IMG/VR virus record: IMGVR_UViG_3300026484_000007
Coordinates: 124,001 to 188,000 of that record
Direction: 5' to 3' (one strand)
DNA: 64,000 nucleotides
Every line of letters starts with the position of its first letter. The stretch's first letter is position 1. Made by a program: the position numbers and the translations under genes. Shown here piece by piece: positions 38,854-50,772 of the stretch. Under the pieces are notes generated by a model. That model searched no databases and was not told the origin of the DNA. It worked only from the letters and a program-made list of their open reading frames with translations.

Positions 38854-38909
38854 AATAATCCTTTTTTAATTTTTTTAAGCAAATAAAAATCTCTGAGAGA
38901 GATAGACTC

Positions 38910-39509
38910 TCATTTGATAAAGTCTAAGGGCATAAGCCCTTTTTTAACTTCATCCCAAAGAGCCCAAATTGCAAACTTCCCAGTTTCACTAGAAAGTTCC
39001 TTGAACTCCTTAATAAAGTCATCTATCTCTTTTTTTAGAGATTCATTATCCCAAATTAATGGGATAATTTTTGCGAAATGGGCTCTTGACCCTAATTCGC
39101 AGATTAATTTTACCTCTTCCGAGGTGATAGACGGTTTTACTAAACCGTCCAATTTCGCGGCCACAGTTGCCGCAAAATCCATCGCAGCTTCAATTGCTGC
39201 AATAGATTTTTTGTTGTACGATAGATAGCCGCTGCTATCTATCGTTACTAAACTTCTATCAGAAAACTTAACCCTCGGGTTAAGTTTTCTGATTTTTTCA
39301 AATCGTGGATCGATCAGTCTCTGATCAATAATCCATGTCTCGCCTCCACACATGAACGCCATGTCGTTCGGGAGACTTAATAATGGGTACGATGTGTACC
39401 CAAACTCAATCCCTGAAACAATTCCAGGGAATTCAATACCAGGGATAGCACTTACCATCCCCGTCAATTTTTTTTCAATTTTTTCCTTAGCTACTCTTCT
39501 TCTAGCCAT
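38910..39509 (-). CDS. hypothetical early-type protein (GC-richer)
   Basis: SD-preceded ATG at 39509; cassette-type promoter upstream. Confidence 0.7.
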   Translation of the reverse strand: MARRRVAKEKIEKKLTGMVSAIPGIEFPGIVSGIEFGYTSYPLLSLPNDMAFMCGGETWIIDQRLIDPRFEKIRKLNPRVKFSDRSLVTIDSSGYLSYNKKSIAAIEAAMDFAATVAAKLDGLVKPSITSEEVKLICELGSRAHFAKIIPLIWDNESLKKEIDDFIKEFKELSSETGKFAIWALWDEVKKGLMPLDFIK

Positions 39510-39634
39510 TCTTTTTTCCTCCTTACCATTTTTTACATACGTTCGCCTTACACGGCGAACAAAAAAACTCGCGAGAAACAAGTGGTATGCCTTGTTCCTC
39601 ACTATAATAATATCAATGATTTACAATCGACTTC

Positions 39635-40808: not shown

Positions 40809-41720
40809 TTATAATACATAACCCTTTACATTCTCGAATTCATATAATTTATCTTTCGGAAATACTACGTTTGGTGGAAATTCCACATCTTCTAAAAGAT
40901 AAGCTCCACCTCCAGCAATAATTACTTTTTCCGATGTCCCAAGAATTTTCTTTTCTGAAACAAGAATACTATTGAATAATTTTTGAATAAAATTATTTTT
41001 TAATTCAGTGATCATTTCTGGAATTCCTTCGACTTCTCTTCCACCGAAAACATATTTTTTCTTTAATAAAATTTTAATTGCTTCTTGTTCAGTAAATTTA
41101 TCTTTAAATTTTGCTTCTAGCCAATTAGTAAAAGGTCTTATGATACTTACGACTCCGTGAGTAGGAAACGATTTACATTTAGCTCTAATTGGCATATTAT
41201 CTTGGAAAGCTAAAAAGTTGATAGTATTGAATCCAATATCGATCACTGCCGCACTTTCAGGAGTTGTTCCAGTATCATGAATATAACTATAATATACTCC
41301 AGCGCCTTGAGGAATTATATTAATATTATTGATGTTTAACGTAATTCCATTTACAGTGATTGTTTTTAATTTTTCAACGAATCTTTCTTTTTCGCTCCAG
41401 TCGGCTAAAGCTAAACCAGTTCTTAAATCAATATCCTCGATCAATTTTCCATCTTTAATTAAATTTAATTTATTTAAAACATGAAATAAAATCAGTGGAC
41501 CGAATTCTTCTAAAAATTCATATTTAGTTGTTGTAAAACTTTCATCGATTGCTACGTCTCCAACTCTATATTTTTTACCGTTGTATTCGTAAATTTCGTC
41601 TTCGCCATAATTAATTCCAGTATCAATAGCGAAAGAGATCGCTGTGGGTAATTTGAATAATTTTCCATTCGCAGATAATTTTGTACTACTATACCCTATA
41701 TCTAAACCTAATCTATACAT
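40809..41720 (-). CDS. actin-like ATPase, ParM/StbA family
   Basis: GLDIGYSSTK, IPQGAG, VIDIGFNT, IIAGGGA, FENVKGY. Confidence 0.88.
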   Translation of the reverse strand: MYRLGLDIGYSSTKLSANGKLFKLPTAISFAIDTGINYGEDEIYEYNGKKYRVGDVAIDESFTTTKYEFLEEFGPLILFHVLNKLNLIKDGKLIEDIDLRTGLALADWSEKERFVEKLKTITVNGITLNINNINIIPQGAGVYYSYIHDTGTTPESAAVIDIGFNTINFLAFQDNMPIRAKCKSFPTHGVVSIIRPFTNWLEAKFKDKFTEQEAIKILLKKKYVFGGREVEGIPEMITELKNNFIQKLFNSILVSEKKILGTSEKVIIAGGGAYLLEDVEFPPNVVFPKDKLYEFENVKGYVL

Positions 41721-42400
41721 TAATTCTCCTTTTTAATAATTTTAGTTTTTTCTGTTGTCTGAGCATGTTCTTTGTATTGCTGAGCTGCTAGCTTAATTAT
41801 TTCTTTATTTCTCTTTTTTGGATCTTTCTTAATTTTTGCGTATGAATCTAAAAAAGATTCTTTTGCTTTTTTAATAATATTATTGTAATTTTTTTTATGT
41901 CTTTTTAATAATTTATAGAATTCATCTTTTTCGATTAAGTAATCGTTTGATAAATGTAAATTATACATTTTATTAATAAGATCCATAAAAGATTCTTCTA
42001 GTTCTTTTTTAAATAAATCTACGAAACCTTTTTTATGCAAATAATGATAAAAAGGACTATCTTTATCAATAATGATCTTAAAAAGATGCTTCTGAGTTTC
42101 AAAAATATATCTAACGGGAAATTCTTGATATTCTTTGTCTTTATTGAATTTAGCCGCTTCTAATCCTAAATTTACTATTTTACAATAATCATGATATAAT
42201 TTTTCTAAAATAAATTCATCTGATATTTTATAAGGATGCTTATTTTGAGGATCGTATTTTTCATCGATGCTTTTAAAAAAATATAATAAAGTATCTTCGA
42301 CGAATTCTTTAGCAAGGGTTTGGGAATTTCGATGATTATTATCAATGATTACCGCTGAATGTTTAGCGAGATCCTCAGCTTTTTCTTTTAATTTTTTCAT
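41720..42400 (-). CDS. hypothetical protein
   Basis: 226-aa ORF with SD. Confidence 0.7.
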   Translation of the reverse strand: MKKLKEKAEDLAKHSAVIIDNNHRNSQTLAKEFVEDTLLYFFKSIDEKYDPQNKHPYKISDEFILEKLYHDYCKIVNLGLEAAKFNKDKEYQEFPVRYIFETQKHLFKIIIDKDSPFYHYLHKKGFVDLFKKELEESFMDLINKMYNLHLSNDYLIEKDEFYKLLKRHKKNYNNIIKKAKESFLDSYAKIKKDPKKRNKEIIKLAAQQYKEHAQTTEKTKIIKKEN

Positions 42401-42445
42401 TTTTTCTCCTTTTTAATTTTTTTAAGCAAATAAAAAACGGGAAGC

Positions 42446-42829
42446 TTAAGTTAGATAAACTAACTCGCTTTCCCAAAATTCGGCGCTAAGCGTCGATTGC
42501 TGAAGCTCTTTTTTTAGAGCCTCAGCCAATCTCATGACCGCGGGTTTGTATAATTCGCGGTTGCAAAATTGAGGGTTGCATGTACCCTCAATTTTGATCA
42601 CACTCTCACCACCGACTGGGCATCCCCAGTCGGTATTATAAACTACGGCCGCGGGCGAAACCGCAGCAGAAATGTATTCGCCGAATTCTTCGAATTCGGC
42701 TTTAGCCAATTGCTGCCAAAGGGCAGCAATTTTATTTGCTAACTCAGGAGCCGCAACTCCTGAGATATTGTGGAAGTAGCCTTCCGCTACCCCCACAACC
42801 ATTCTAAAAGATATTGTTGTCTTCTTCAT
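42446..42829 (-). CDS. putative SAM / SAM-AMP lyase-like protein
   Basis: Y64, E75 and Q111 spacing plus LAEALKKELQQSTL resemble phage SAM lyases (from recall). Confidence 0.5.
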   Translation of the reverse strand: MKKTTISFRMVVGVAEGYFHNISGVAAPELANKIAALWQQLAKAEFEEFGEYISAAVSPAAVVYNTDWGCPVGGESVIKIEGTCNPQFCNRELYKPAVMRLAEALKKELQQSTLSAEFWESELVYLT

Positions 42830-42955
42830 TCTTTCTCCTTTTGATTTTTTTTGCTATTTATATATCAATGTTAAAAAAGGAGTTTTTGAAAATTATTTAA
42901 TAATTATTTAATAATTATTAAATAAAAAATAAAAATAAAAAAACAGAGAGTGGGC

Positions 42956-43114
42956 TTAATACAGTCCACTCTCAACCCCTTCTCTCCAATGAGAGAAAAG
43001 AGTATTGCGCGCCTTAACCGGCGCATTTGGGTGAGTTGTTCTCACCCATTTTGTAAATTTTCTGTATTCGGCGCGAGTGATACTCACACCATTAATTATT
43101 TTCTTTCTCATCAT
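42956..43114 (-). CDS. small early-type protein (52 aa)
   Basis: Manual translation MMRKKIINGVSITRAEYRKFTKWVRTTHPNAPVKARNTLFSHWREGVESGLY; promoter, SD and terminator present. Confidence 0.7.
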   Translation of the reverse strand: MMRKKIINGVSITRAEYRKFTKWVRTTHPNAPVKARNTLFSHWREGVESGLY

Positions 43115-43198
43115 TTCTCCTTTTTATTTTTTTTGCTATTTATATATCAATGATAAAAAAAGAGTTTTTAAAATTAAAAAATAACACCGCGGAGAAGA

Positions 43199-43396
43199 CT
43201 ACTTTTGTAATCTTTCCGCGATGTTATTTAGTAACATCGATTCTGTTATTTTTGATTCGGCCTCGAGAATGAGGTCGTACGCCTCACTCCCGAATTCGAA
43301 TTTTTCTTCTAATTTTTCAAGAAGGTTATACACCTCCTCGAGTTTTTTTTTAGATTCCTTTTCAAGGAATCTAATTTCTTTTTTTGCTAAATTCAT
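43199..43396 (-). CDS. small early-type protein
   Basis: Cassette promoter and SD. Confidence 0.7.
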   Translation of the reverse strand: MNLAKKEIRFLEKESKKKLEEVYNLLEKLEEKFEFGSEAYDLILEAESKITESMLLNNIAERLQK

Positions 43397-43458
43397 TCTT
43401 TCTCCTTTGATTTTTTTTGCTATTTATATATCAATGATAAAAAAGGAGTTTTTTAAAT

Positions 43459-45015
43459 TTATTTTAACACGAAAACATTGTTCTTTGTTCGTGTAATTCC
43501 TACATAAAGTAATCTTAAAAATAAATTATAATCGGTTTCATAAAGATTAATGAAGTCTCTTAAATCTATAAAAACTTCATCCAAAGTTTGTCCTTGAAGT
43601 TTATGGATTGTGCTCGCGTAAGCATAAGTAACATCAGCACATAAATCATTGAAATTGTATGCAAATTTCCAAAAGTTCTTTTTAGAATTTTTAGAGATCT
43701 TTCTTTGATTATTCATTGTTTTCGCAATATCAAAAACTGCTTCTTTATATAATGGAAAAAGATCTTCTTTAGATCCATCTCCCAAAGGAACTAAAAATTT
43801 ACTTTTATTTTCTGCTGTTAATAAAAAAGCATTGAATTTTATAGGTTTAAGTAAATACGAAGCTTTATTATCTTCAAATAAAAATGGATAGAGATCTTTT
43901 AAAGATGCTAAATAGTCTGGTAAGATTTTTCTAAGTCTATCGATGACTTCTTGAAATTCTTTAATCTTATTCAAAGTAAAAGTTACCAATTCTGGTTCTT
44001 TGATAACTTTAGTCTCTTCTCCATTTGTGAAAATATTGCAAGTGCTTAGTAAATTTCTATCAGTTAATTCATTAGAATTATTAGAAAAAACTATATAATT
44101 ATACGGAGCATTAAATATTAATTTATCTCCTTTTGAATATAATTCATCAGGATTTTTTACTTCTGGATCAAATCTTCTAAAATGGATATTATAATAATTT
44201 ACAAAATTATTTGTAAAAGATCCAATTTTGATTCTTTTTTCATTTGAGAATGATTCTGTTGAATCCGTTAAATCAACAGAATCCATCGGTAAAATTGTCT
44301 CTCCGAATCTATGCTCTAAAAACTTATTAAAAAAATCATTAAATTCAAATTCTCCATATACATGAAAATGATCTATTAAAGATACAATCTCTGAAAGCGG
44401 AGCTTTTTTCTTATTTTCTTCGTATTCTTTAATTAAAAATCTTACTTTTTCAAAGATCTCAAAAAGATCGTTTTTTGTTCTAAGTATCTTTTTTAGAACT
44501 ATTCTATCATAAGGTTCGTCAAAAATTGGAGATCTTGTTTCTTTTACTGGAGGTAATTGATATGGATCTCCAATAAATAAAATATCAAAATTTTTTAAAT
44601 ACTTATTAATGATCCAAAAAAGATCCTTATCGATCATTGAAATTTCGTCGATAATAAAAAAGTCTGCAGAGATCATCATATCTCTTAATTTCGGGACAAA
44701 AATTCTTTCACCGAATTCATTAATATCTGGACGAATTTCAAAATAAGAATGAATTGTCGTAATATTTACTCCTTTTATATTTTGCTCAGATAGCATATTA
44801 TGAATTACTATTGAACTTTGATGAGTAGGAGTTAATATTTGAACGGATCTTTTTTGCTCTTTTAACATTTTTAATAATTCAACGAGAGTCGTCGTTTTTC
44901 CTGTTCCTGCTGATCCAGTAAGGATCAGTTTTCTACCATAACCAAGTTTTTTTGGATCTTCTTTAAAATACTCTAAGACTTTTTGCTGTTCTTCATTTAA
45001 TTTTATTTCTCCCAT
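43459..45015 (-). CDS. Dda/RecD-like SF1B helicase
   Basis: GSAGTGKTT, IIDEISM, GDPYQLPPV, TIHKLQGQT, YVGITR. Confidence 0.9.
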   Translation of the reverse strand: MGEIKLNEEQQKVLEYFKEDPKKLGYGRKLILTGSAGTGKTTTLVELLKMLKEQKRSVQILTPTHQSSIVIHNMLSEQNIKGVNITTIHSYFEIRPDINEFGERIFVPKLRDMMISADFFIIDEISMIDKDLFWIINKYLKNFDILFIGDPYQLPPVKETRSPIFDEPYDRIVLKKILRTKNDLFEIFEKVRFLIKEYEENKKKAPLSEIVSLIDHFHVYGEFEFNDFFNKFLEHRFGETILPMDSVDLTDSTESFSNEKRIKIGSFTNNFVNYYNIHFRRFDPEVKNPDELYSKGDKLIFNAPYNYIVFSNNSNELTDRNLLSTCNIFTNGEETKVIKEPELVTFTLNKIKEFQEVIDRLRKILPDYLASLKDLYPFLFEDNKASYLLKPIKFNAFLLTAENKSKFLVPLGDGSKEDLFPLYKEAVFDIAKTMNNQRKISKNSKKNFWKFAYNFNDLCADVTYAYASTIHKLQGQTLDEVFIDLRDFINLYETDYNLFLRLLYVGITRTKNNVFVLK

Positions 45016-45026
45016 ATTTGCTCTCC

Positions 45027-46778
45027 TTACATAAAATTAATTTTAGCATTCGGATATGTTCCTAATACGTTATTTCTGATAATAGTAGTTACTGATTTAT
45101 TCAAAGTTTCAAACATTTCCGTAACTGGAAATAATGCAATAGGAGTTGGTTTTCCTTCATGTAATCTTGTAATTCTCCCAAGAGATTGAACGATAGTAAT
45201 TCTTCCAATTATCGGTGATCCAAAAATGATACCACTTAAAGAACTTTTATCGAATCCTTCTCTAAGAAGATTAAAGTTGCTTATTAATATCTTTGATTCT
45301 TTAATTCTTTGGTAATAAAGATCTAAAGCTTTTTGGATATTAATCTCTTGAAGTTCTAGCGATTTTACACGTTCTTCTTTGTATAATAAATCAGCTTCTT
45401 TTCTCTTTAATTCTTTATTTTTTACTTTAAGATTTAATTCTTCTTTGAATTCTTTCAGTTTATTTTTTAAAATTTTATTTTCATCTTTAGCAATCTGAAT
45501 TGAATCTTGTTTAGAATCTCCTTTTAAAACTAAAGTTTCGTCTTGAAATTCTGGGTATAATCCTAATAATATATCAGCCAATTTTTTAGCTAATTTATTA
45601 GTGCTAAAAAGTATTACTACTTCCCTATTAGTATCTCTAAACCATTTAACCCACTGAGTAAGAAATTGCAAATAACTATCTTTATTATATAAATACATAT
45701 TATATAATGAAAGCATCATAGGATAATCATTCATACGTTGTTTTAAAGCAAAAGCTTCTTTTTCATTAAAATGAATAAAATCATTATTTAATCTTTGAAT
45801 GTAAATTTCAGGCGTTAGAACCTCCGCATCCGCTTCGATTAAAACATCACCAATACTAGTATTTAATAAAAATTTATTAAGATCTTTACGGAATGGAGTA
45901 GCGCTTAATCCCATAACGTTACATGTTTTAAATAAAGATAAAGTTTTACTATAACCATATGCACCAAAACCGTGGCATTCATCAGCTAAAACAAAGTCAA
46001 CTTCAGAATATAATTCTTGTAAAAGATTAATTTTAATTCTTTTAATTTGGCTTAATAAAGATTGTGGTTTAGTAATAATTACTTTAGCTTTCATTGCTTC
46101 TTCGATATCTTTTATTTCGGATCCTTGAAGGATACATATATCTTCTTCTTTTAAATCAGTAAACGTTAAAAATGCTTGTTTCCATTGATCTTCTAAGATT
46201 ACTTTTGGAACGATTACTAAAGTTTTTTTAAAGATCTGTCCGAGAAAAATTCCCATAAACGTTTTGCCAACTCCTGGAGCTGCTTGGAGAATTCCTCTGA
46301 TCTTTTTTTGATCATTAATGATCTTTAAAAGATGCTTTATTATAGGAACTTGATTTTCTCTTGGATCATTATTTACTATATAATTCTTATAATTCTTATT
46401 AGAAATATTTTTTATCATTGATATATCCAGTTCATTTCCACCGGCTTCCCCAAGATCAACTTCGTATCTTTTTTCGATCTCTTGTATATTTCTTATGAAA
46501 TCTACGAATTCGTATTTGTTCCCTTGATTATCCATCGCAATGAATTCTTCTAATTTTAACATATTTTCTTCCCAAAAGAATCTTGGAAGAAGAACCCACC
46601 CGATAGTTATGTCTTCTATTTCTAATCTTTTTGGATCGATGTATACTTGATTTTCATCGAAATACATTACTCCTTCGTCAAGATCTTCGATTTTAAATTT
46701 CCATCCTTGATTTAATTTATATTTTGGATTTTTTAATTCTTGATAAATTTCATATTTTATAAAAACTCCGTTTTCCAT
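45027..46778 (-). CDS. SF2 helicase (UvsW-like)
   Basis: APGVGKT, DECH, LSATP, EGFD, QSLGRITR. Confidence 0.88.
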   Translation of the reverse strand: MENGVFIKYEIYQELKNPKYKLNQGWKFKIEDLDEGVMYFDENQVYIDPKRLEIEDITIGWVLLPRFFWEENMLKLEEFIAMDNQGNKYEFVDFIRNIQEIEKRYEVDLGEAGGNELDISMIKNISNKNYKNYIVNNDPRENQVPIIKHLLKIINDQKKIRGILQAAPGVGKTFMGIFLGQIFKKTLVIVPKVILEDQWKQAFLTFTDLKEEDICILQGSEIKDIEEAMKAKVIITKPQSLLSQIKRIKINLLQELYSEVDFVLADECHGFGAYGYSKTLSLFKTCNVMGLSATPFRKDLNKFLLNTSIGDVLIEADAEVLTPEIYIQRLNNDFIHFNEKEAFALKQRMNDYPMMLSLYNMYLYNKDSYLQFLTQWVKWFRDTNREVVILFSTNKLAKKLADILLGLYPEFQDETLVLKGDSKQDSIQIAKDENKILKNKLKEFKEELNLKVKNKELKRKEADLLYKEERVKSLELQEINIQKALDLYYQRIKESKILISNFNLLREGFDKSSLSGIIFGSPIIGRITIVQSLGRITRLHEGKPTPIALFPVTEMFETLNKSVTTIIRNNVLGTYPNAKINFM

Positions 46779-46905
46779 TTCTTTATCCTTTTTTTAATTT
46801 TTTTAAGCAAATAAAATAATTTTGCGAATTCGACGATTTTCCGAACTCGCAATCAAAACACTAATTATATCTTTAAAATCTAAAGAAAAAGAAGACCTGC
46901 GAGAG

Positions 46906-47193
46906 TTATAATTTAACTCTCACCGGGTCTTCAAACCACTCCATTGTTGCGTTAGATGGAAGAATGATCTTCCATCTTTTTCTGGCAGTCGCCACTACCT
47001 CTTTTGGGTTGGTAGTGGCAAACACTGCCATGTCGCCGCTACGACCTGCAAGGCCGTAGACAGCGACTTTTATGTATTTGTCGCTGTCGTATGGTTTTAC
47101 CCATACGACAGCGACTTTAATTCCCTGAATATTTTGACTTGGCGCCTTTTGCGCCAAGTCGATTAATTCAAAAATATTTAAATTCAATTTCAT
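46906..47193 (-). CDS. small early-type protein
   Basis: Cassette promoter, SD, GC-richer. Confidence 0.7.
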   Translation of the reverse strand: MKLNLNIFELIDLAQKAPSQNIQGIKVAVVWVKPYDSDKYIKVAVYGLAGRSGDMAVFATTNPKEVVATARKRWKIILPSNATMEWFEDPVRVKL

Positions 47194-47272
47194 TCTTCCT
47201 CCTTAATTTTTTTTGCTATTAGATTATCAATGATTTAATTAATCATTATAAAATAAAAAGAAAAAGAAGAGG

Positions 47273-47539
47273 TTAGAGGTATTCGATCTTAACGATCTCC
47301 TCCTCTAAAAACACTCTTCTTTTTCTCTCTCCTCTCGGAGAGATTAAGTAGGCTTCTTTCAGCCCACCTTTCCCCGAAAGGAGATATCCCGTGCTTTTGC
47401 TGAATGCCCATTCAGCAAAAGCATTATAAATCCCGTATCCTCCCGCACTATAGTACGGGAACGGGATCACTTCCGAATTCCTTTTTTCCCAAATCAGTTC
47501 GAGCTTCCACTCGAACTGATATTTGAAATCTCTTTTCAT
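47273..47539 (-). CDS. small early-type protein
   Basis: Cassette promoter and SD. Confidence 0.7.
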   Translation of the reverse strand: MKRDFKYQFEWKLELIWEKRNSEVIPFPYYSAGGYGIYNAFAEWAFSKSTGYLLSGKGGLKEAYLISPRGERKRRVFLEEEIVKIEYL

Positions 47540-47645
47540 TCTTCCTCCTTAATTTTTTTTTGCTTAATTGATATCAATGAGGTTGTGGAAGAGTTCTAAA
47601 AATTTTAATGAAATAAAAAAAATTTTGATAAAAAGAAAGCTTGAG

Positions 47646-47930
47646 TCAAATGGCTCTTTCGAGCCATTTGACTGCCTTCTTCAAGGCTTTCACCTTGAAG
47701 TGAAGGTCGTCGACCTTCACTTTGAGCTCAAACTCTTCTGAGCTCAAAATATCCATATGCATGAGGAAGTCAACTTCCCCATGCATTTTAATATACTCGG
47801 CTTCAGCCGCTTCAAGAGCGGCTTCAGCAGCCTCAGTTTCCCTAAGAGCGGCTTTCGCCGCTCTTAGATTTTTTTTCTCTTCTTTAAGAGCGGCTTTCGC
47901 CGCTCTTAATAATTTTTCAATTTTTTCCAT
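47646..47930 (-). CDS. small helical early-type protein with an LRAAKAAL duplication
   Basis: Cassette promoter and SD. Confidence 0.7.
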   Translation of the reverse strand: MEKIEKLLRAAKAALKEEKKNLRAAKAALRETEAAEAALEAAEAEYIKMHGEVDFLMHMDILSSEEFELKVKVDDLHFKVKALKKAVKWLERAI

Positions 47931-48052
47931 TCTTCCTCCTTGAAATTTTTTTTTGCTATTAGATTATCAATGATACATAGATGTAATTCTAAAAAAAATT
48001 TTAAAAAAATTAAGAAAATTTAATAAATAAAAAATTAAGAAAAAAGCAACGG

Positions 48053-48247
48053 TTATTCCGGAGCGGGTAGCTCAACTACCTCAACTCCGTAACTAGGGTT
48101 GCTTTCTTCTTGGAGGGCGCGGACATATGCCTCCGCGTCCTCCTTTTCCCAGAATACTTTGGATACGGAACTGATTCCGTATCCAAAGTAACCATCTACG
48201 AAGTAGTACGCTACTCCGTAGATTTTTTTATTTTCTAAATTTTCCAT
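48053..48247 (-). CDS. small early-type protein
   Basis: Cassette promoter and SD. Confidence 0.7.
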   Translation of the reverse strand: MENLENKKIYGVAYYFVDGYFGYGISSVSKVFWEKEDAEAYVRALQEESNPSYGVEVVELPAPE

Positions 48248-48357
48248 ATCTCCTCCTTAATTTTTTTTGCTATTAGATTATCAATGATACATAGATGTAA
48301 TTCTAAAAAAAATTTTAAAAAAATTAAGAAATAAAAAGAGATTGGATGATCTGGAGT

Positions 48358-48561
48358 TTAAAACTCCAAGTCATCCAAATCATCTAATTCTAGCAGCTTC
48401 TCTAAAGCTGCTGCTTTTTCAGCAGCAGCTTTTGCTACTTTAGCCTCATACGAGGCCAAAATTGCGGCTTCTTTAGCCGCTTTTTTTGCTGCTGCAGCTT
48501 TTGCTGCAGCTGTTTCTGAGGCTCTTTGAGCCTCAGAAACTCTTTCAATTAGAAATTTCAT
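48358..48561 (-). CDS. Ala/Lys-rich microprotein with acidic tail
   Basis: SD-preceded ATG at 48561. Confidence 0.7.
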   Translation of the reverse strand: MKFLIERVSEAQRASETAAAKAAAAKKAAKEAAILASYEAKVAKAAAEKAAALEKLLELDDLDDLEF

Positions 48562-48681
48562 TCTTTCCTCCTTAAATTTTTTTTGCTTAATTGATATCAA
48601 TGATATAAAACGAAGTTTTAAAATAATTTACATGTACTTAAATATACTTAAATACTTAAAATTGCTCACAAAGGATATAAT

Positions 48682-49317
48682 ATGTTTTTTATAAATGAAA
48701 TGACGGAGAAAAAAATAAATAATATCGCTAATATTATTATCGAATTAAATACTCTTTTAGAAGAAGCGGCAGGGAAATACTCAATGCCTTTAACTGGAGT
48801 TCCAAAAGCAGGAAAAAGTTTAATATCAGGTGGTTTAGATCATGTTTATAAAAAAAGCAAAGATAAATATTTTATAGAGAAATTATCGCCGGATATGGAA
48901 GGAAAATGGACTTTTGATACCGGAAAGTTAGAATTAGCTAGAGAAATGAAAAATAAATTAAAAGACAAAAATGAGTTTTTTGATGATAGATTCGTAAAAA
49001 TAAAAAATACTCATATTCCTAATTTAATTAAAAATTTTGATAAAACTGTGTTTGATTTGGGAGGTATTCCTTCGAAAGAAAACGAGAGTTTTATCGATAA
49101 TATACAAAAAAGTTCAATTTTAAATGATAAAAAATTCGTACCAGTCGTTCTTTCTCCTGATAGACAGAAATCGTACGAATGGCAAAAGTTTTTCAATGAA
49201 AAATTCGAAACCGATCCTATAATTTATACTCCAAATTGGAATTTTAAAAAAGATATAAAACAACAATCGATATATCATGCTAATGAACTTCTTAACCGAA
49301 TCCAAAAAAGATTATAA
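48682..49317 (+). CDS. P-loop ATPase of the Csx3-associated (AAA-type) family
   Basis: GVPKAGKS Walker A, SPDMEGKW (cf. CPDGEGxW, from recall), VFDLGG Walker B; convergent with csx3. Confidence 0.7.
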   Translation: MFFINEMTEKKINNIANIIIELNTLLEEAAGKYSMPLTGVPKAGKSLISGGLDHVYKKSKDKYFIEKLSPDMEGKWTFDTGKLELAREMKNKLKDKNEFFDDRFVKIKNTHIPNLIKNFDKTVFDLGGIPSKENESFIDNIQKSSILNDKKFVPVVLSPDRQKSYEWQKFFNEKFETDPIIYTPNWNFKKDIKQQSIYHANELLNRIQKRL

Positions 49318-49338
49318 ATAAAAAAACATAATCCCTGC

Positions 49339-49635
49339 TTACACAGGGATTATATCTCCGACTTTTACGTCGGGTGTGTGGCTTTCAGCCACAATTCCCC
49401 CGCTTAGGCGAGGGTCGTAGCACGCCACGAATGGCGTGCAATGGTACTCATGTACCATCGCGGCAAAGAGCCATATCGGCCCTCTACCGCTTAAAATTAT
49501 ACCTACCCCAGGTTCAACCTGAGGCAATCTTTTAATTGCCTCAGGTAACTCCGCAGGGGTAATAACCCCACTTGTGAGCTCAAAGCTCACAAGTGCAATT
49601 TTATCGCTTACTTCTTTTACATCATATTTTATCAT
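49339..49635 (-). CDS. csx3: CRISPR ring nuclease Csx3/Crn3
   Basis: GVITPAEL, GIILSGRGPIWLFA..H.YH, YDPRL.GGIV..SH. Confidence 0.9.
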   Translation of the reverse strand: MIKYDVKEVSDKIALVSFELTSGVITPAELPEAIKRLPQVEPGVGIILSGRGPIWLFAAMVHEYHCTPFVACYDPRLSGGIVAESHTPDVKVGDIIPV

Positions 49636-49701
49636 CGTCTTTCTCCTTTTGATTTTTTTGCTATTAGATTATCAATGATATACAAATCAGTTCTAAAAAA
49701 A

Positions 49702-49842
49702 TCACCAGAAGTTTTTATTCTTGTACTTCTGGCGATTGTATTTCTTAGAGTTCTTTTGAACTCTAGTATGGGGCTTTAATCCGCCCCATGTCTGACGAGT
49801 TTTGATCTCGTCTTTTTTGATTTTAATTGAAAATTTTTTCAT
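49702..49842 (-). CDS. small basic peptide (46 aa)
   Basis: Manual translation MKKFSIKIKKDEIKTRQTWGGLKPHTRVQKNSKKYNRQKYKNKNFW; promoter and SD present. Confidence 0.7.
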   Translation of the reverse strand: MKKFSIKIKKDEIKTRQTWGGLKPHTRVQKNSKKYNRQKYKNKNFW

Positions 49843-49998
49843 AATTTCTCCTTTTGATTTTTTTTAATTTTTCTGATAAATATATATCAATGTCTAAAAA
49901 AATTATTATAAAAATAAAAACTTAACAACTCTAAGATGTGTTTTTTCCGCTTTTGCGTCTGAGTTTAGCACCTCTCAGTCCGTCAGCCTCTTGGCTTC

Positions 49999-50151
49999 TT
50001 ATTCAGAAGTCGCAAGAACAGCTGCTTCGAAAGCAGCCTCAAGAGGCATTTCAGCCTCTTGAACTGCCTGAAGCATCGCTGCTACAAGCGCTTCAGAAGG
50101 GGCATTAAGCCCCTTCGAAGCCAAGAAAGCTAAAATCGCTTTCTTGTCCAT
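49999..50151 (-). CDS. Ala-rich microprotein (50 aa)
   Basis: Manual translation MDKKAILAFLASKGLNAPSEALVAAMLQAVQEAEMPLEAAFEAAVLATSE; promoter and SD present. Confidence 0.7.
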   Translation of the reverse strand: MDKKAILAFLASKGLNAPSEALVAAMLQAVQEAEMPLEAAFEAAVLATSE

Positions 50152-50379
50152 TTTCCTCCTTTATAATTTTTTTGCTAATTAAATATCTAATAAAACTAAA
50201 GCAGTTCTAAAAATTCTTTAAAAATAAAAATGAAGGAGGGAGAGAGGAAAGAGAAAGAAAAGAGAGGGAAAATGTCGCTATATTTCTAATAAAACTTTTT
50301 AGTTCTAAAATCGATTTTAAAATAATTTAAAAATAATTTAAAAAATAAATTTTTTTGATAAATAAAAGTCTGGCGAGAG

Positions 50380-50697
50380 TTATAATAACTCCTTCCAAAC
50401 TTCGTGCAAATCGTTTGCTGCTTTATATAATTTTTTTTTCAATTTCTTTAATTTTTTGATTTTGCCTCTATTTACACGAAGCTCGTCCTCGAGCTTCGTT
50501 TTATGGCGGGAATACTCCGCCATTTCTTCCCCAGAGGCTCCTACCTCTGGGAAGTTTAATCTTTCATTCTGCAACCAGCAGAACTTGAGGTGCTCTCGCA
50601 CCTCTTTTAATTCTTTTAATTCGCATTTTACTTTCTCAGCCTCATATCTGAGGCTATTTTCATAATCGAATACTTCATTTTTTAAATCTTTTCTCAT
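50380..50697 (-). CDS. small coiled-coil early-type protein
   Basis: Cassette promoter and SD. Confidence 0.7.
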   Translation of the reverse strand: MRKDLKNEVFDYENSLRYEAEKVKCELKELKEVREHLKFCWLQNERLNFPEVGASGEEMAEYSRHKTKLEDELRVNRGKIKKLKKLKKKLYKAANDLHEVWKELL

Positions 50698-50772
50698 TTC
50701 TTTCTCCTTTGATTTTTTTTGCTAATTAAATATCTAATAAACCAAAAGCAGTTCTAAAAATTCTTTAAAAAT

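What the first reader, a model, noticed from the sequence alone, without database searches (positions are those of the whole stretch)
42446..42829. Candidate SAM / SAM-AMP lyase in the cassette array
Seen: 127 aa with Y64, E75 and Q111 and LAEALKKELQQSTL. From recall, T3-type SAM lyases have Tyr/Glu/Gln residues at similar spacing (about 10 and 36). Established: SAM lyases counter type I RM and BREX, and related lyases destroy SAM-AMP, the messenger of CorA-linked type III CRISPR. Inference: together with Csx3, this phage could cover two type III signalling chemistries.
Basis: inference. Interest (0 to 1): 0.7.

Follow-up and report, generated by a model that had tools for sequence, protein, structure and literature searches.

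The report
Phage SAM-AMP lyase beside Csx3
A 273-kb hydrothermal-vent phage carries a small enzyme closely matching the solved SAM-AMP lyase of CorA-type CRISPR systems, and 6.5 kb away a complete Csx3 ring nuclease, so it probably destroys two different type III CRISPR alarm molecules.

Summary
Window 42446-42829 (minus strand) is a 127-aa ORF with Y64, E75 and Q111.

- **Family.** It aligns end to end with the Clostridium botulinum SAM-AMP lyase (PDB 9GAD/9GAB/9LQD; E 5e-28, about 40% identity). It keeps the catalytic Glu and Gln and 10 of the 11 ligand-site residues; the eleventh is Thr to Ser. Its model has the beta-alpha-beta-beta-alpha-beta PII-like fold (pLDDT 93.6; TM 0.88-0.90 to 9GAB) and is predicted to form the trimer.
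- **Not a T3/Svi3-3 SAM lyase.** It resembles that family only by fold (TM 0.59, no sequence hit).
- **Carrier.** The genome is a 272.6-kb vent phage (27% GC) with no RAMP or CorA genes, so the enzyme is phage cargo. The most likely role is an anti-CRISPR that degrades SAM-AMP.
- **Setting.** The gene is the most GC-rich ORF of at least 100 aa in the genome. It heads an array of 11 small, mostly GC-rich genes, each behind one conserved leader motif found nowhere else in the genome.
- **Csx3.** One of these genes is a Csx3/Crn3 ring nuclease with all catalytic residues.

Activity, host and anti-CRISPR effect are untested. This is a new member of a known kind; the pairing with Csx3 is the new element.

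The parts
42446..42829 (-). SAM-AMP lyase homologue, 127 aa (P0001). Predicted ligand-site residues: Y52, S54, W68, C70, E75 (catalytic), N85, F88, Q111, T113, S115, Y125. Y64 is invariant in the family.
   Evidence: 9gad/9lqd, E 5e-28; pLDDT 93.6; TM 0.88-0.90; profile E 5e-49. GC 0.461 and GC3 0.453, against a genome mean of 0.273 and 0.175.
42830..42868 (-). Leader of the lyase cassette: conserved motif TTGATATATAAATAGCAAAAAA (42847-42868), an A-run, then Shine-Dalgarno AAGGAG (42835-42840). Its role as a promoter or 5' leader is inferred.
   Evidence: The simple sigma-70 scan did not call it.
42847..50736 (-). Array of 11 copies of the leader motif, each 13-18 nt before the start codon of a small gene. 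In the window they start at 42847, 43129, 43413, 47209, 47556, 47949, 48263, 48579, 49654, 50168 and 50715. The array is interrupted by two native-GC helicase genes (43459-46778) and one plus-strand gene (48682-49317).
   Evidence: 11 matches against 0.17 expected, with 0 of 100 shuffles reaching 11; these are the only leader-type copies in the 272.6-kb genome; the cassette genes have GC3 of 0.37-0.51, except one at 0.235, against 0.17-0.18 for the helicases.
49339..49635 (-). Csx3/Crn3 ring nuclease homologue, 98 aa, with S49 G50 R51 I54 H62 H65 D74 R76 H86 matching AfCsx3 S44 G45 R46 I49 H57 H60 D69 R71 H80. Same leader motif as the lyase.
   Evidence: PF09620, 92.5 bits, E 1.5e-26; AF_1864, E 5e-18; residue roles from PMC7371418; GC 0.471.
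42956..43114 (-). Cassette gene, 52 aa, unknown function. Its motif variant is identical to the lyase's.
   Evidence: no family.
43199..43396 (-). Cassette gene, 65 aa, unknown function. Its motif variant is identical to the lyase's.
46906..48561 (-). Five cassette genes of 95, 88, 94, 64 and 67 aa, at 46906-47193, 47273-47539, 47646-47930, 48053-48247 and 48358-48561. All are of unknown function and have GC of 0.42-0.45.
   Evidence: no usable family or fold lead.
49999..50697 (-). Two cassette genes (50 aa at 49999-50151; 105 aa at 50380-50697) behind the TAGATATTTAATTAGC variant of the motif. Unknown function.

Best explanation
The ORF encodes a stand-alone, homotrimeric PII-like lyase of the SAM-AMP lyase family, carried as accessory cargo by a 273-kb hydrothermal-vent phage.

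**Mechanism, inferred by homology to the C. botulinum enzyme.** SAM-AMP is the second messenger that Cas10 of CorA-linked type III CRISPR systems makes from SAM and ATP. It binds in a slot between two subunits.
- W68 and F88 (the latter from the neighbouring subunit) stack on the AMP adenine.
- T113 and Y125 hold the bridging phosphate.
- S54 and S115 contact the MTA adenine.
- E75, at the end of the short T-loop, and Q111, in the B-loop, promote intramolecular attack of the methionine carboxylate on the sulfonium-bound carbon. This releases homoserine lactone and MTA-AMP.

**Proposed role.** Made by the phage from its own conserved leader, probably early in infection, the enzyme would remove SAM-AMP before it opens the CorA membrane effector. 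That makes it a candidate anti-CRISPR. A Csx3 ring nuclease behind the same leader would do the same to cyclic tetra-adenylate.

**Shown here:** homology, residues, predicted fold, predicted trimer, phage carriage, foreign base composition, shared leader motif.
**Inferred:** substrate, timing of expression, anti-CRISPR effect, and a host that has a CorA type III system.
For: **Family membership**
- Full-length phmmer hit to 9lqd/9gad/9gab, E 5e-28 to 2e-27. The family profile hits them at 5e-49.
- All ligand-site residues listed in PMC12255297 are present, with one conservative change (T112 to S115). They are near-invariant in 165 relatives.

**Structure**
- The AF2 model has pLDDT 93.6 and beta-alpha-beta-beta-alpha-beta order with a 12-residue T-loop.
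- Foldseek gives TM 0.88-0.90 and rmsd 2.0 A to 9gab/9gad/9lqd, against TM 0.59 to the Svi3-3 SAM lyase.
- Homotrimer prediction scores 0.91, best of 3 controls 0.00. That mark was reached by 20 of 30 proteins solved as pairs of one chain and by 1 of 23 solved as single chains. The runs agree in at least 98% of contacts and partner pLDDT is at least 87. The interface uses beta2, beta4, the T-loop and residues 52, 54, 85 and 119-127, as in the crystal trimer. Because a like complex is solved, the pass may reflect memory.

**Phage carriage**
- The record is a virus of 272,602 bp, 97% complete, with no RAMP hit and no CorA hit above cut-off.
- The nearest relatives (54-70% identity) sit in virus-like contigs. 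A 47% relative sits beside terminase and portal genes. Fourteen IMG/VR viral contigs carry confirmed homologues.

**Selection and setting**
- A natural variant in another study's run shows third-position-biased substitutions and no change at signature residues.
- The leader motif is shared with a catalytically complete Csx3.

**Literature**
- The C. botulinum enzyme and the phage enzyme AcrIIIB4 degrade SAM-AMP but not SAM (PMC12255297). CorA systems occur in epsilon-proteobacteria and euryarchaea, among other groups (PMC10600005); that these lineages are common at vents is my own knowledge.
Against: - No biochemical data exist for this protein, and substrate choice is inferred from about 40% identity.
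- The host is unknown, so it is not shown that it has a CorA type III system, or a cA4-signalling one.
- In the only tested system, SAM-AMP degradation is required for CorA immunity. There the phage lyase AcrIIIB4 substituted for the host enzyme and supported immunity, and its anti-CRISPR activity could not be shown in vivo (PMC12255297).
- Cellular relatives with the same DWGCPVGGE loop lie in 10 small genome bins, mostly labelled Patescibacteria or Gammaproteobacteria, that have no RAMP protein. Family membership alone therefore does not prove a CRISPR-linked role.
- The 2023 paper reported weak activity of the C. botulinum enzyme on SAM.
- The leader motif is not shown to be a promoter.
Confidence: 0.68

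Rival explanations
1. It is a SAM lyase in the functional sense of T3 SAMase/Svi3-3. It would deplete cellular SAM to disable SAM-dependent restriction-modification, BREX or methylation-based defence.
For: It shares the superfamily and catalytic Glu/Gln pair with Svi3-3. The C. botulinum enzyme showed some turnover of SAM in the 2023 study. PDB entries 9lqd-9lqh name the same protein 'SAM lyase', and one has SAH bound.
Against: The 2025 study states that SAM is not a substrate of either the C. botulinum enzyme or the phage enzyme. All residues that build the extra AMP pocket are kept here: W68, F88, T113, Y125 and C70. There is no sequence similarity to Svi3-3 or T3 even with a profile at E 10, and the fold match to Svi3-3 is much weaker (TM 0.59 against 0.90).
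Confidence: 0.1
2. It acts on another, still unknown SAM-derived or adenylated metabolite, or has a housekeeping role unrelated to CRISPR.
For: Homologues of 37-43% identity with the same T-loop lie in 10 small genome bins, mostly labelled Patescibacteria or Gammaproteobacteria, that have no RAMP protein. They sit at a conserved chromosomal place with a conserved upstream non-coding element. The family has 356 clusters, far more than the known CorA loci would suggest. Type III-D2 systems also make SAM-AMP2 (PMC13294483).
Against: The only known role of SAM-AMP is antiphage signalling. The two characterised family members are specific for it. The phage gene shares its leader with a bona fide CRISPR ring nuclease. 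The bins are incomplete, so absence of type III there is not proven.
Confidence: 0.13
3. The lyase serves a CRISPR-CorA system carried by the phage itself, or supports the host system as the required 'off switch', rather than counteracting it.
For: In the reconstituted B. fragilis system, immunity needs a SAM-AMP-degrading enzyme, and a phage lyase can supply it.
Against: The 97%-complete phage genome has no RAMP hit and no CorA hit above cut-off. A phage gains nothing from completing the host's immunity.
Confidence: 0.03
4. It is a recently acquired passenger gene that is not expressed or not functional in this phage.
For: Its base composition is strongly foreign: it has the highest GC of the 235 ORFs of at least 100 aa, and its GC3 lies about 5.8 sd above the mean.
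Against: The frame is intact and has a consensus Shine-Dalgarno sequence and the phage's own leader motif. All catalytic residues are kept. Substitutions in a natural variant are biased to third codon positions, p 1.9e-4. The same clade is kept in several related virus-like contigs.
Confidence: 0.05

Closest known systems
[quoted passage not shown] 2023 (PMC10600005) and 2025 (PMC12255297)
   Same: - Same length class (127 against about 125 aa) and about 40% identity over the whole length.
- Same beta-alpha-beta-beta-alpha-beta PII-like fold, with TM 0.88-0.90.
- Same predicted trimer.
- Catalytic Glu and Gln, the strictly conserved Cys, and the AMP- and phosphate-binding residues are all present.
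   Different: - It is encoded by a phage, not beside corA/cmr genes.
- T112 is replaced by Ser.
- It has three extra residues after beta1.
- The presumed role is counter-defence rather than the host's own signal turnover.
- Its activity is untested.
AcrIIIB4 (DAN18478), the phage-encoded SAM-AMP lyase from a human-microbiome Caudoviricetes contig (PMC12255297)
   Same: It is a phage-borne member of the same lyase family and a candidate anti-CRISPR against SAM-AMP signalling.
   Different: [quoted passage not shown] The protein here is the bare 127-aa domain.
- Fusion-type relatives of 210-225 aa were seen here on Clostridium megaplasmids and in metagenomes, but they are not the nearest relatives of this protein.
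- The habitat differs (deep-sea vent), and so does the carrier (a 273-kb phage).
Phage SAM lyases Svi3-3 (PDB 6ZM9/6ZNB) and T3 SAMase
   Same: Same trimeric PII-like superfamily, a short T-loop, structurally equivalent catalytic Glu and Gln, and a lyase chemistry that gives homoserine lactone.
   Different: - No detectable sequence similarity, by phmmer or by profile at E 10.
- The fold match is only TM 0.59 at 15% identity.
- The T-loop conformation differs and the AMP pocket is absent in Svi3-3.
- The substrate is SAM rather than SAM-AMP.
Viral ring nucleases (AcrIII-1/DUF1874; viral Csx16, Csx20, SAVED ring nuclease) and cellular Crn3/Csx3
   Same: The logic is the same: a small phage enzyme degrades a type III CRISPR second messenger. 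The neighbouring gene in the same array is itself a Csx3 with all catalytic residues.
   Different: - Those enzymes are phosphodiesterases acting on cyclic oligoadenylates, whereas this is a lyase acting on the methionine part of SAM-AMP.
- Csx3 was not among the ring nucleases reported in a survey of 28,114 phage genomes (PMC12409355).
- It gave no tblastn hit in 50,697 GenBank phage records.

Membership tests
SAM-AMP lyase family (prototype C. botulinum, PDB 9GAD) | Full-length sequence homology to the prototype | tested here: met
   phmmer gives E 5e-28 to 2e-27 over residues 5-126. A family profile gives 5e-49.
SAM-AMP lyase family (prototype C. botulinum, PDB 9GAD) | Ferredoxin-like beta1-alpha1-beta2-beta3-alpha2-beta4 PII-like fold with a short (10-12 residue) T-loop | tested here: met
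   The AF2 model has pLDDT 93.6, with elements E3-13, H28-49, E56-62, E75-83, H91-108 and E115-123; the loop is 63-74. Foldseek gives TM 0.88-0.90 and rmsd 2.0 A to 9gab/9gad/9lqd. This is a prediction, not a solved structure.
SAM-AMP lyase family (prototype C. botulinum, PDB 9GAD) | Homotrimer with beta2/beta4 head-to-tail interface and active sites between subunits | tested here: met
   The three-copy prediction scores 0.91, best of 3 controls 0.00. That mark was reached by 20 of 30 solved one-chain pairs and by 1 of 23 single chains. Runs agree in at least 98% of contacts and pLDDT is at least 87. The interface covers residues 56-63, 117-124, the T-loop, and 52, 54, 85 and 125. The pass may come from memory of the solved trimer, and it is in silico only.
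SAM-AMP lyase family (prototype C. botulinum, PDB 9GAD) | Catalytic Glu at the end of the T-loop (E71) and Gln in the B-loop (Q108) | tested here: met
   E75 and Q111 align with them. 9gab (E71Q) differs from 9gad at exactly the column of E75. The residues are present in 164 and 163 of 165 relatives.
SAM-AMP lyase family (prototype C. botulinum, PDB 9GAD) | Residues specific to the SAM-AMP pocket: W64 and F84 (stack the AMP adenine), T110 and Y122 (bridging phosphate), C66 (strictly conserved), S50 and T112 (MTA adenine), Y48, N81 | tested here: met
   They map to W68, F88, T113, Y125, C70, S54, S115 (Thr to Ser), Y52 and N85 by the alignment. Residue roles come from PMC12255297.
SAM-AMP lyase family (prototype C. 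botulinum, PDB 9GAD) | Converts SAM-AMP to MTA-AMP plus homoserine lactone and does not use SAM | not testable with these tools
   This needs purified protein and HPLC/MS.
SAM-AMP lyase family (prototype C. botulinum, PDB 9GAD) | Gene adjacent to corA and cmr genes of a type III-B CRISPR locus (the cellular 'off-switch' role) | tested here: not met
   The gene lies in a phage genome with no RAMP hit and no CorA hit above cut-off. Its neighbours are helicases, an actin-like protein and RecJ. It belongs to the protein family but not to the CRISPR-locus class.
AcrIIIB4-type phage SAM-AMP lyase | Encoded by a phage | tested here: met
   The record is an IMG/VR virus of 272,602 bp that CheckV rates 97% complete.
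AcrIIIB4-type phage SAM-AMP lyase | N-terminal extra domain fused to the lyase domain | tested here: not met
   The protein is 127 aa and consists of the lyase domain only. Fusion forms are separate, more distant relatives.
AcrIIIB4-type phage SAM-AMP lyase | Inhibits CorA type III immunity in vivo | not testable with these tools
   This has not been shown even for the prototype.
Phage SAM lyase (Svi3-3 / T3 SAMase) | Sequence membership | tested here: not met
   It was not found by phmmer or by the family profile at E up to 10. It was also not found by Pfam or PHROGs.
Phage SAM lyase (Svi3-3 / T3 SAMase) | Same fold and catalytic Glu/Gln | tested here: inconclusive
   Foldseek matches 6zm9 at E 5e-4, TM 0.59, 15% identity. 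The Glu/Gln equivalence is taken from the published superposition. This indicates the same superfamily but not the same family.
Csx3/Crn3 ring nuclease (neighbouring gene 49339-49635) | Pfam Cas_csx3 domain and catalytic/binding residues H57, H60, D69, R71, H80, S44, G45, R46, I49 of AfCsx3 | tested here: met
   PF09620 scores 92.5 bits against a cut-off of 21. The match to AF_1864 has E 5e-18, with all nine residues identical in the alignment.

The most novel reading that the evidence does not exclude
The 8-kb stretch from 42.8 to 50.7 kb could be a counter-defence island. On this reading the phage captures foreign, GC-rich genes and wires each to one phage-specific early leader.

- Two of the eleven cassettes are enzymes that erase the two known chemistries of type III CRISPR signalling: cA4, through a Csx3 of a kind not seen in catalogued phages, and SAM-AMP.
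- The other nine orphan proteins (50-105 aa) would then be new anti-defence proteins, some possibly aimed at type III systems as well.

This would be the first phage seen to carry both signal-degrading activities, and a ready-made list of anti-CRISPR candidates.
Probability: 0.35. Interest if true: 0.7.

Novelty: new member of a known kind. Interest (0 to 1): 0.55.

Why it matters
SAM-AMP signalling was discovered in 2023, and only one phage-borne SAM-AMP lyase has been characterised. That one is a fusion protein, and its anti-CRISPR role is still unproven because no cognate host-phage pair exists.

- **A minimal phage version.** This gene is a stand-alone phage form closer to the crystallised enzyme. 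It is part of a small clade kept in related vent viruses.
- **Linkage to Csx3.** It is linked by a shared leader to a Csx3 ring nuclease. This suggests a single phage that disarms both cyclic-oligoadenylate and SAM-AMP branches of type III CRISPR.
- **What that would imply.** If confirmed, CorA/SAM-AMP immunity exerts real selection on phages in nature, including at hydrothermal vents.
- **Practical yield.** It would add Csx3 to the viral ring nucleases. It would also offer nine co-regulated orphan genes as candidates for new anti-defence functions.

Tried and rejected
**Family and fold searches that gave nothing useful**
- Pfam and PHROGs gave nothing significant for the lyase. Without the PDB sequence search the gene would look like an orphan.
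- Nine other cassette proteins gave no Pfam or PHROG family. Atlas searches of two of them gave no usable lead.
- tblastn of the lyase and of Csx3 against 50,697 GenBank phage records found no match.

**Locus searches**
- The search for related loci with the 100-sequence alignment failed because no stretch was conserved enough.
- With the 15-sequence alignment it found no confirmed viral locus. A degenerate DNA pattern for YxxD/EWGCPxGGE then found 14.

**A phage-borne CRISPR/CorA system or a second ring nuclease**
- Rejected: there was no RAMP hit, the CorA hits were at most 13 bits, and DUF1874 scored 16.6 bits, below its cut-off.

**Host identification**
- The window has no tRNA and the genome has five. 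The helicase finds only distant Vibrio phage helicases. The host remains unknown.

**CRISPR-adjacent relatives as a control**
- None was recovered. The Clostridium megaplasmid homologues are N-terminal-fusion forms in a region with primase, methylase and HTH genes, not beside cas genes.
- Ten small genome bins carrying relatives have no RAMP hit.

**Other**
- Rfam found only tRNAs near the relatives in seven of these loci.
- The sigma-70 consensus scan did not call the leader motif.
- No paper for PDB 9LQD was found in the library.
- In the second, a joint from 42414 to 42848 that would delete the lyase rests on 30 letters of repeated leader sequence. I treat it as a repeat artefact, not as evidence of a cassette-less variant.

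Full report
**Observation.** Window 42446..42829 holds, on the minus strand, an ATG-initiated ORF of 127 codons.
- An AAGGAG ribosome-binding site lies at 42840-42835.
- Pfam and PHROGs give nothing significant.

**Identity.** A phmmer search of all PDB chain sequences gives three full-length hits (query 5-126) at E 5e-28 to 2e-27.
- The hits are 9lqd 'SAM lyase' and 9gad/9gab 'SAM-AMP lyase', all the same Clostridium botulinum protein.
- 9gab is the E71Q variant, and it differs from 9gad exactly at the column aligned with E75.
- A profile built from 100 relatives hits these chains at 5e-49. It finds neither Svi3-3 nor T3 SAMase even at E 10.
- An exhaustive HMMER search of 1.84 billion representative proteins finds 356 clusters at E no greater than 1e-3.
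- In an alignment of 165 relatives, Y64 is invariant. G69-C70-P71, G74-E75, N85, Q111, T113 and Y125 are nearly so.

**Residue mapping.** Chi et al. 2025 (PMC12255297) describe the ligand site of the C. botulinum enzyme bound to MTA-AMP.
- W64 and F84 stack on the AMP adenine.
- T110 and Y122 bind the bridging phosphate.
- S50 and T112 contact the MTA adenine.
- E71Q and Q108A strongly reduce activity.
- By the alignment these residues are Y52, S54, W68, C70, E75, N85, F88, Q111, T113, S115 and Y125 here. The only change is Thr to Ser.
- The residues that distinguish a SAM-AMP pocket from the SAM pocket of Svi3-3 are therefore all present.

**Structure.** An AlphaFold2 model built with the 100-sequence alignment has mean pLDDT 93.6 and pTM 0.87. 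Its order is beta-alpha-beta-beta-alpha-beta with a 12-residue T-loop at 63-74.
- Foldseek against the PDB ranks 9gab, 9lqd and 9gad first (TM 0.88-0.90, rmsd 2.0-2.1 A, 39-41% identity).
- The Svi3-3 SAM lyase follows (6zm9, TM 0.59, E 5e-4, 15% identity), and then PII-like proteins.
- A three-copy complex prediction scored 0.91, with 0.00 as the best of three controls. That mark was reached by 20 of 30 proteins solved as pairs of one chain and by 1 of 23 solved as single chains.
- The runs agree in at least 98% of contacts and partner pLDDT is at least 87.
- The interface uses beta2 (56-63), beta4 (117-124) and the T-loop. On the other subunit it uses 52, 54, 85 and 119-127. This is the composite active site seen in the crystal.
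- Because a like trimer has been solved, this pass shows likeness rather than proof.

**Carrier and context.** The window is bases 124001-188000 of an IMG/VR virus record of 272,602 bp. CheckV rates it 97% complete, and its GC is 27.2%.
- The DNA is held by runs labelled hydrothermal vent metagenome.
- Neighbouring genes are typical of a large phage's replication module: a RecJ-like exonuclease, an actin-like protein, a P-loop kinase, a RecD/Pif1-like helicase and an SF2 helicase.
- The genome has no RAMP hit, no CorA hit above 13 bits and no DUF1874 hit above cut-off. The lyase therefore does not serve a phage-borne CRISPR system.

**Relatives.**
- The nearest relatives (54-70% identity) form a clade of ten with the query, with FastTree support 0.86.
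- Where context is available, they lie in virus-like contigs.
- A 47% relative lies beside terminase, portal and scaffold genes.
- A degenerate DNA pattern for YxxD/EWGCPxGGE found 14 IMG/VR viral contigs, all confirmed by tblastn. They include phages of 246 and 266 kb.
- No homologue exists in 50,697 GenBank phage records.
- Twelve Clostridium megaplasmids carry a 218-aa form with an N-terminal extra domain, the architecture of AcrIIIB4. It is not next to cas genes.

**The cassette array.** The motif TTGATA-N7-AGCAAAAAA, followed by an A-run, a Shine-Dalgarno sequence and a start codon, occurs 11 times in the window against 0.17 expected. None of 100 shuffles reached 11.
- All copies are on the minus strand between 42847 and 50736. 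The looser whole-genome scan gave five other hits, none followed by a ribosome-binding site and start codon.
- Each precedes a small gene of 50-127 aa. The lyase is one and Csx3 is another.
- These genes are compositionally foreign. The lyase has GC 0.461 and GC3 0.453, the highest GC of the 235 ORFs of at least 100 aa (genome mean GC 0.273, sd 0.043; GC3 0.175, sd 0.048).
- The other cassette genes have GC3 of 0.37-0.51, with one exception. The two helicases that interrupt the array have 0.17-0.18.
- A similar leader precedes the lyase homologue in a related contig, and a looser version precedes it in another (L023/L024 and L003).
- The simple sigma-70 scan does not call the motif, so its promoter role is inferred.
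- From my own knowledge, the arrangement recalls the promoter-bearing mobile cassettes (PeSLs) of T4-type phages.

**Csx3.** Window 49339..49635 (minus strand) matches Pfam Cas_csx3 at 92.5 bits and A. fulgidus Csx3 at E 5e-18.
- Identical residues occupy the positions of S44, G45, R46, I49, H57, H60, D69, R71 and H80. The roles of these residues are described in PMC7371418.
- Csx3 gives no tblastn hit in GenBank phages.
- It is not among the ring nucleases reported in a survey of 28,114 phage genomes (PMC12409355).
- Four other lyase-bearing viral genomes lack it.

**Reality of the gene in nature.**
- An independent assembly of the probable source run spans 41500-42869 without a difference.
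- A run from a different study holds a variant about 97% identical, with the same link between the lyase and its downstream gene.
- Of the 30 listed substitutions inside the ORF, 20 are at third codon positions (p 1.9e-4). None touches a signature residue.

**Interpretation.** The best-supported reading is a phage-encoded, stand-alone SAM-AMP lyase that degrades the CorA-activating messenger. It is a candidate anti-CRISPR, co-organised with a cA4 ring nuclease. I put membership of the protein family at about 0.9 and the full functional statement at 0.68.

**Cautions.**
- No assay has been done and the host is unknown.
- In the reconstituted B. fragilis system, SAM-AMP degradation is required for immunity, so anti-CRISPR activity could not be shown even for AcrIIIB4.
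- Relatives with the same T-loop occur in ten small genome bins, mostly labelled Patescibacteria or Gammaproteobacteria, that have no RAMP protein. The family is therefore wider than CRISPR loci.

**Rivals.** They are a true SAM lyase against RM/BREX (0.10), another substrate or role (0.13), service to a CRISPR system (0.03) and an inert passenger (0.05).

**Novelty.** The enzyme family, its structure and one phage example are published, so this is a new member of a known kind. Four things are new:
- the bare-domain phage form in a vent jumbo phage;
- its strong foreign base composition;
- its place at the head of an 11-cassette array with a private leader motif;
- its pairing with a phage-borne Csx3.

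Noticed in passing
window 49339-49635 (-): A phage-borne Csx3/Crn3 ring nuclease with all catalytic residues and GC 0.47. It gave no tblastn hit in 50,697 GenBank phages. Its nearest named relatives are archaeal (a Bathyarchaeota protein at 51% identity, and A. fulgidus).
   Followed up: yes
window 42847-50736 (-): Eleven copies of the leader motif TTGATA-N7-AGCAAAAAA, each followed by a ribosome-binding site and start codon, occur only here in the 272.6-kb genome. Each lies before a small, mostly GC-rich gene. Nine of the eleven products have no known family. There are three motif sub-variants, which group neighbouring cassettes.
   Followed up: partly
window 38854-38888, 42401-42435, 46782-46816 (-): A second conserved leader, TTTTATTTGCTTAAAAAAATTAAAAA(A/G)GA..ATG on the coding strand, lies before the native-GC genes RecJ, orf226 and the SF2 helicase. 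In Logan contigs of four vent runs its depth is 8-50 times that of the flanks, so it is repeated across many loci or related phages.
   Followed up: no
window 40809-41720 (-): An actin-like protein (ALP_N plus MreB-like_C) lies in the replication module of a 273-kb phage. It is possibly a segregation or positioning filament.
   Followed up: no
window 47646-47930 and 48358-48561 (-): Two cassette proteins (94 and 67 aa) are alanine- and lysine-rich with repeated AAKAA-type units. They are probably coiled coils. Their DNA shows short direct repeats (families D10, D11, D15).
   Followed up: no
window 38910-39602 (-): A 230-aa ORF with a GTG start (the true start may be internal) has foreign composition (GC 0.40, GC3 0.385). 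It has no family and lies outside the motif array.
   Followed up: no
L010, L012, L013, L014, L015 (about 300 nt upstream of the lyase homologue): In small genome bins labelled Patescibacteria or Gammaproteobacteria, the lyase homologue follows a conserved non-coding stretch. It has a 16-nt inverted repeat (TATTGTCCGGATTATT / AATAATCCGGACAATG) and, further upstream, a highly conserved block. There is no Rfam match, and these genomes show no RAMP protein. It may be an undescribed structured RNA or leader.
   Followed up: partly
proteins P0011-P0015 (190-217 aa, metagenomic): These are tandem-duplicated lyase domains. The first half keeps the T-loop WGCPxGGE and the QSTLS motif. The second half keeps the residues normally supplied by the neighbouring subunit (WQ helix, YVS, NPxF, xYL). 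They look like a fused pseudo-dimer.
   Followed up: no
L046 (CP006901.1 104736-105392) and 11 other Clostridium megaplasmids: A 218-aa form with an N-terminal domain fused to the lyase (the AcrIIIB4 architecture, 43-45% identity in the lyase part) lies on 140-276-kb plasmids of C. botulinum, C. sporogenes and C. argentinense. It sits in a region with primase, DNA methylase and HTH genes, not beside cas genes.
   Followed up: partly
genome G000:C1:17865-18313 (outside the window): A cluster of five tRNA genes (Arg-TCG, Ser-GGA, Asn-GTT, Thr-GGT, Gln-TTG) in the phage genome.
   Followed up: no
window 42414 / 42848: One Logan contig of the probable source run joins 42414 to 42848 with six other letters between, which would skip the lyase ORF. 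The joint rests on 30 letters of repeated leader sequence, so it is probably a repeat artefact. A cassette-less variant is not excluded.
   Followed up: partly
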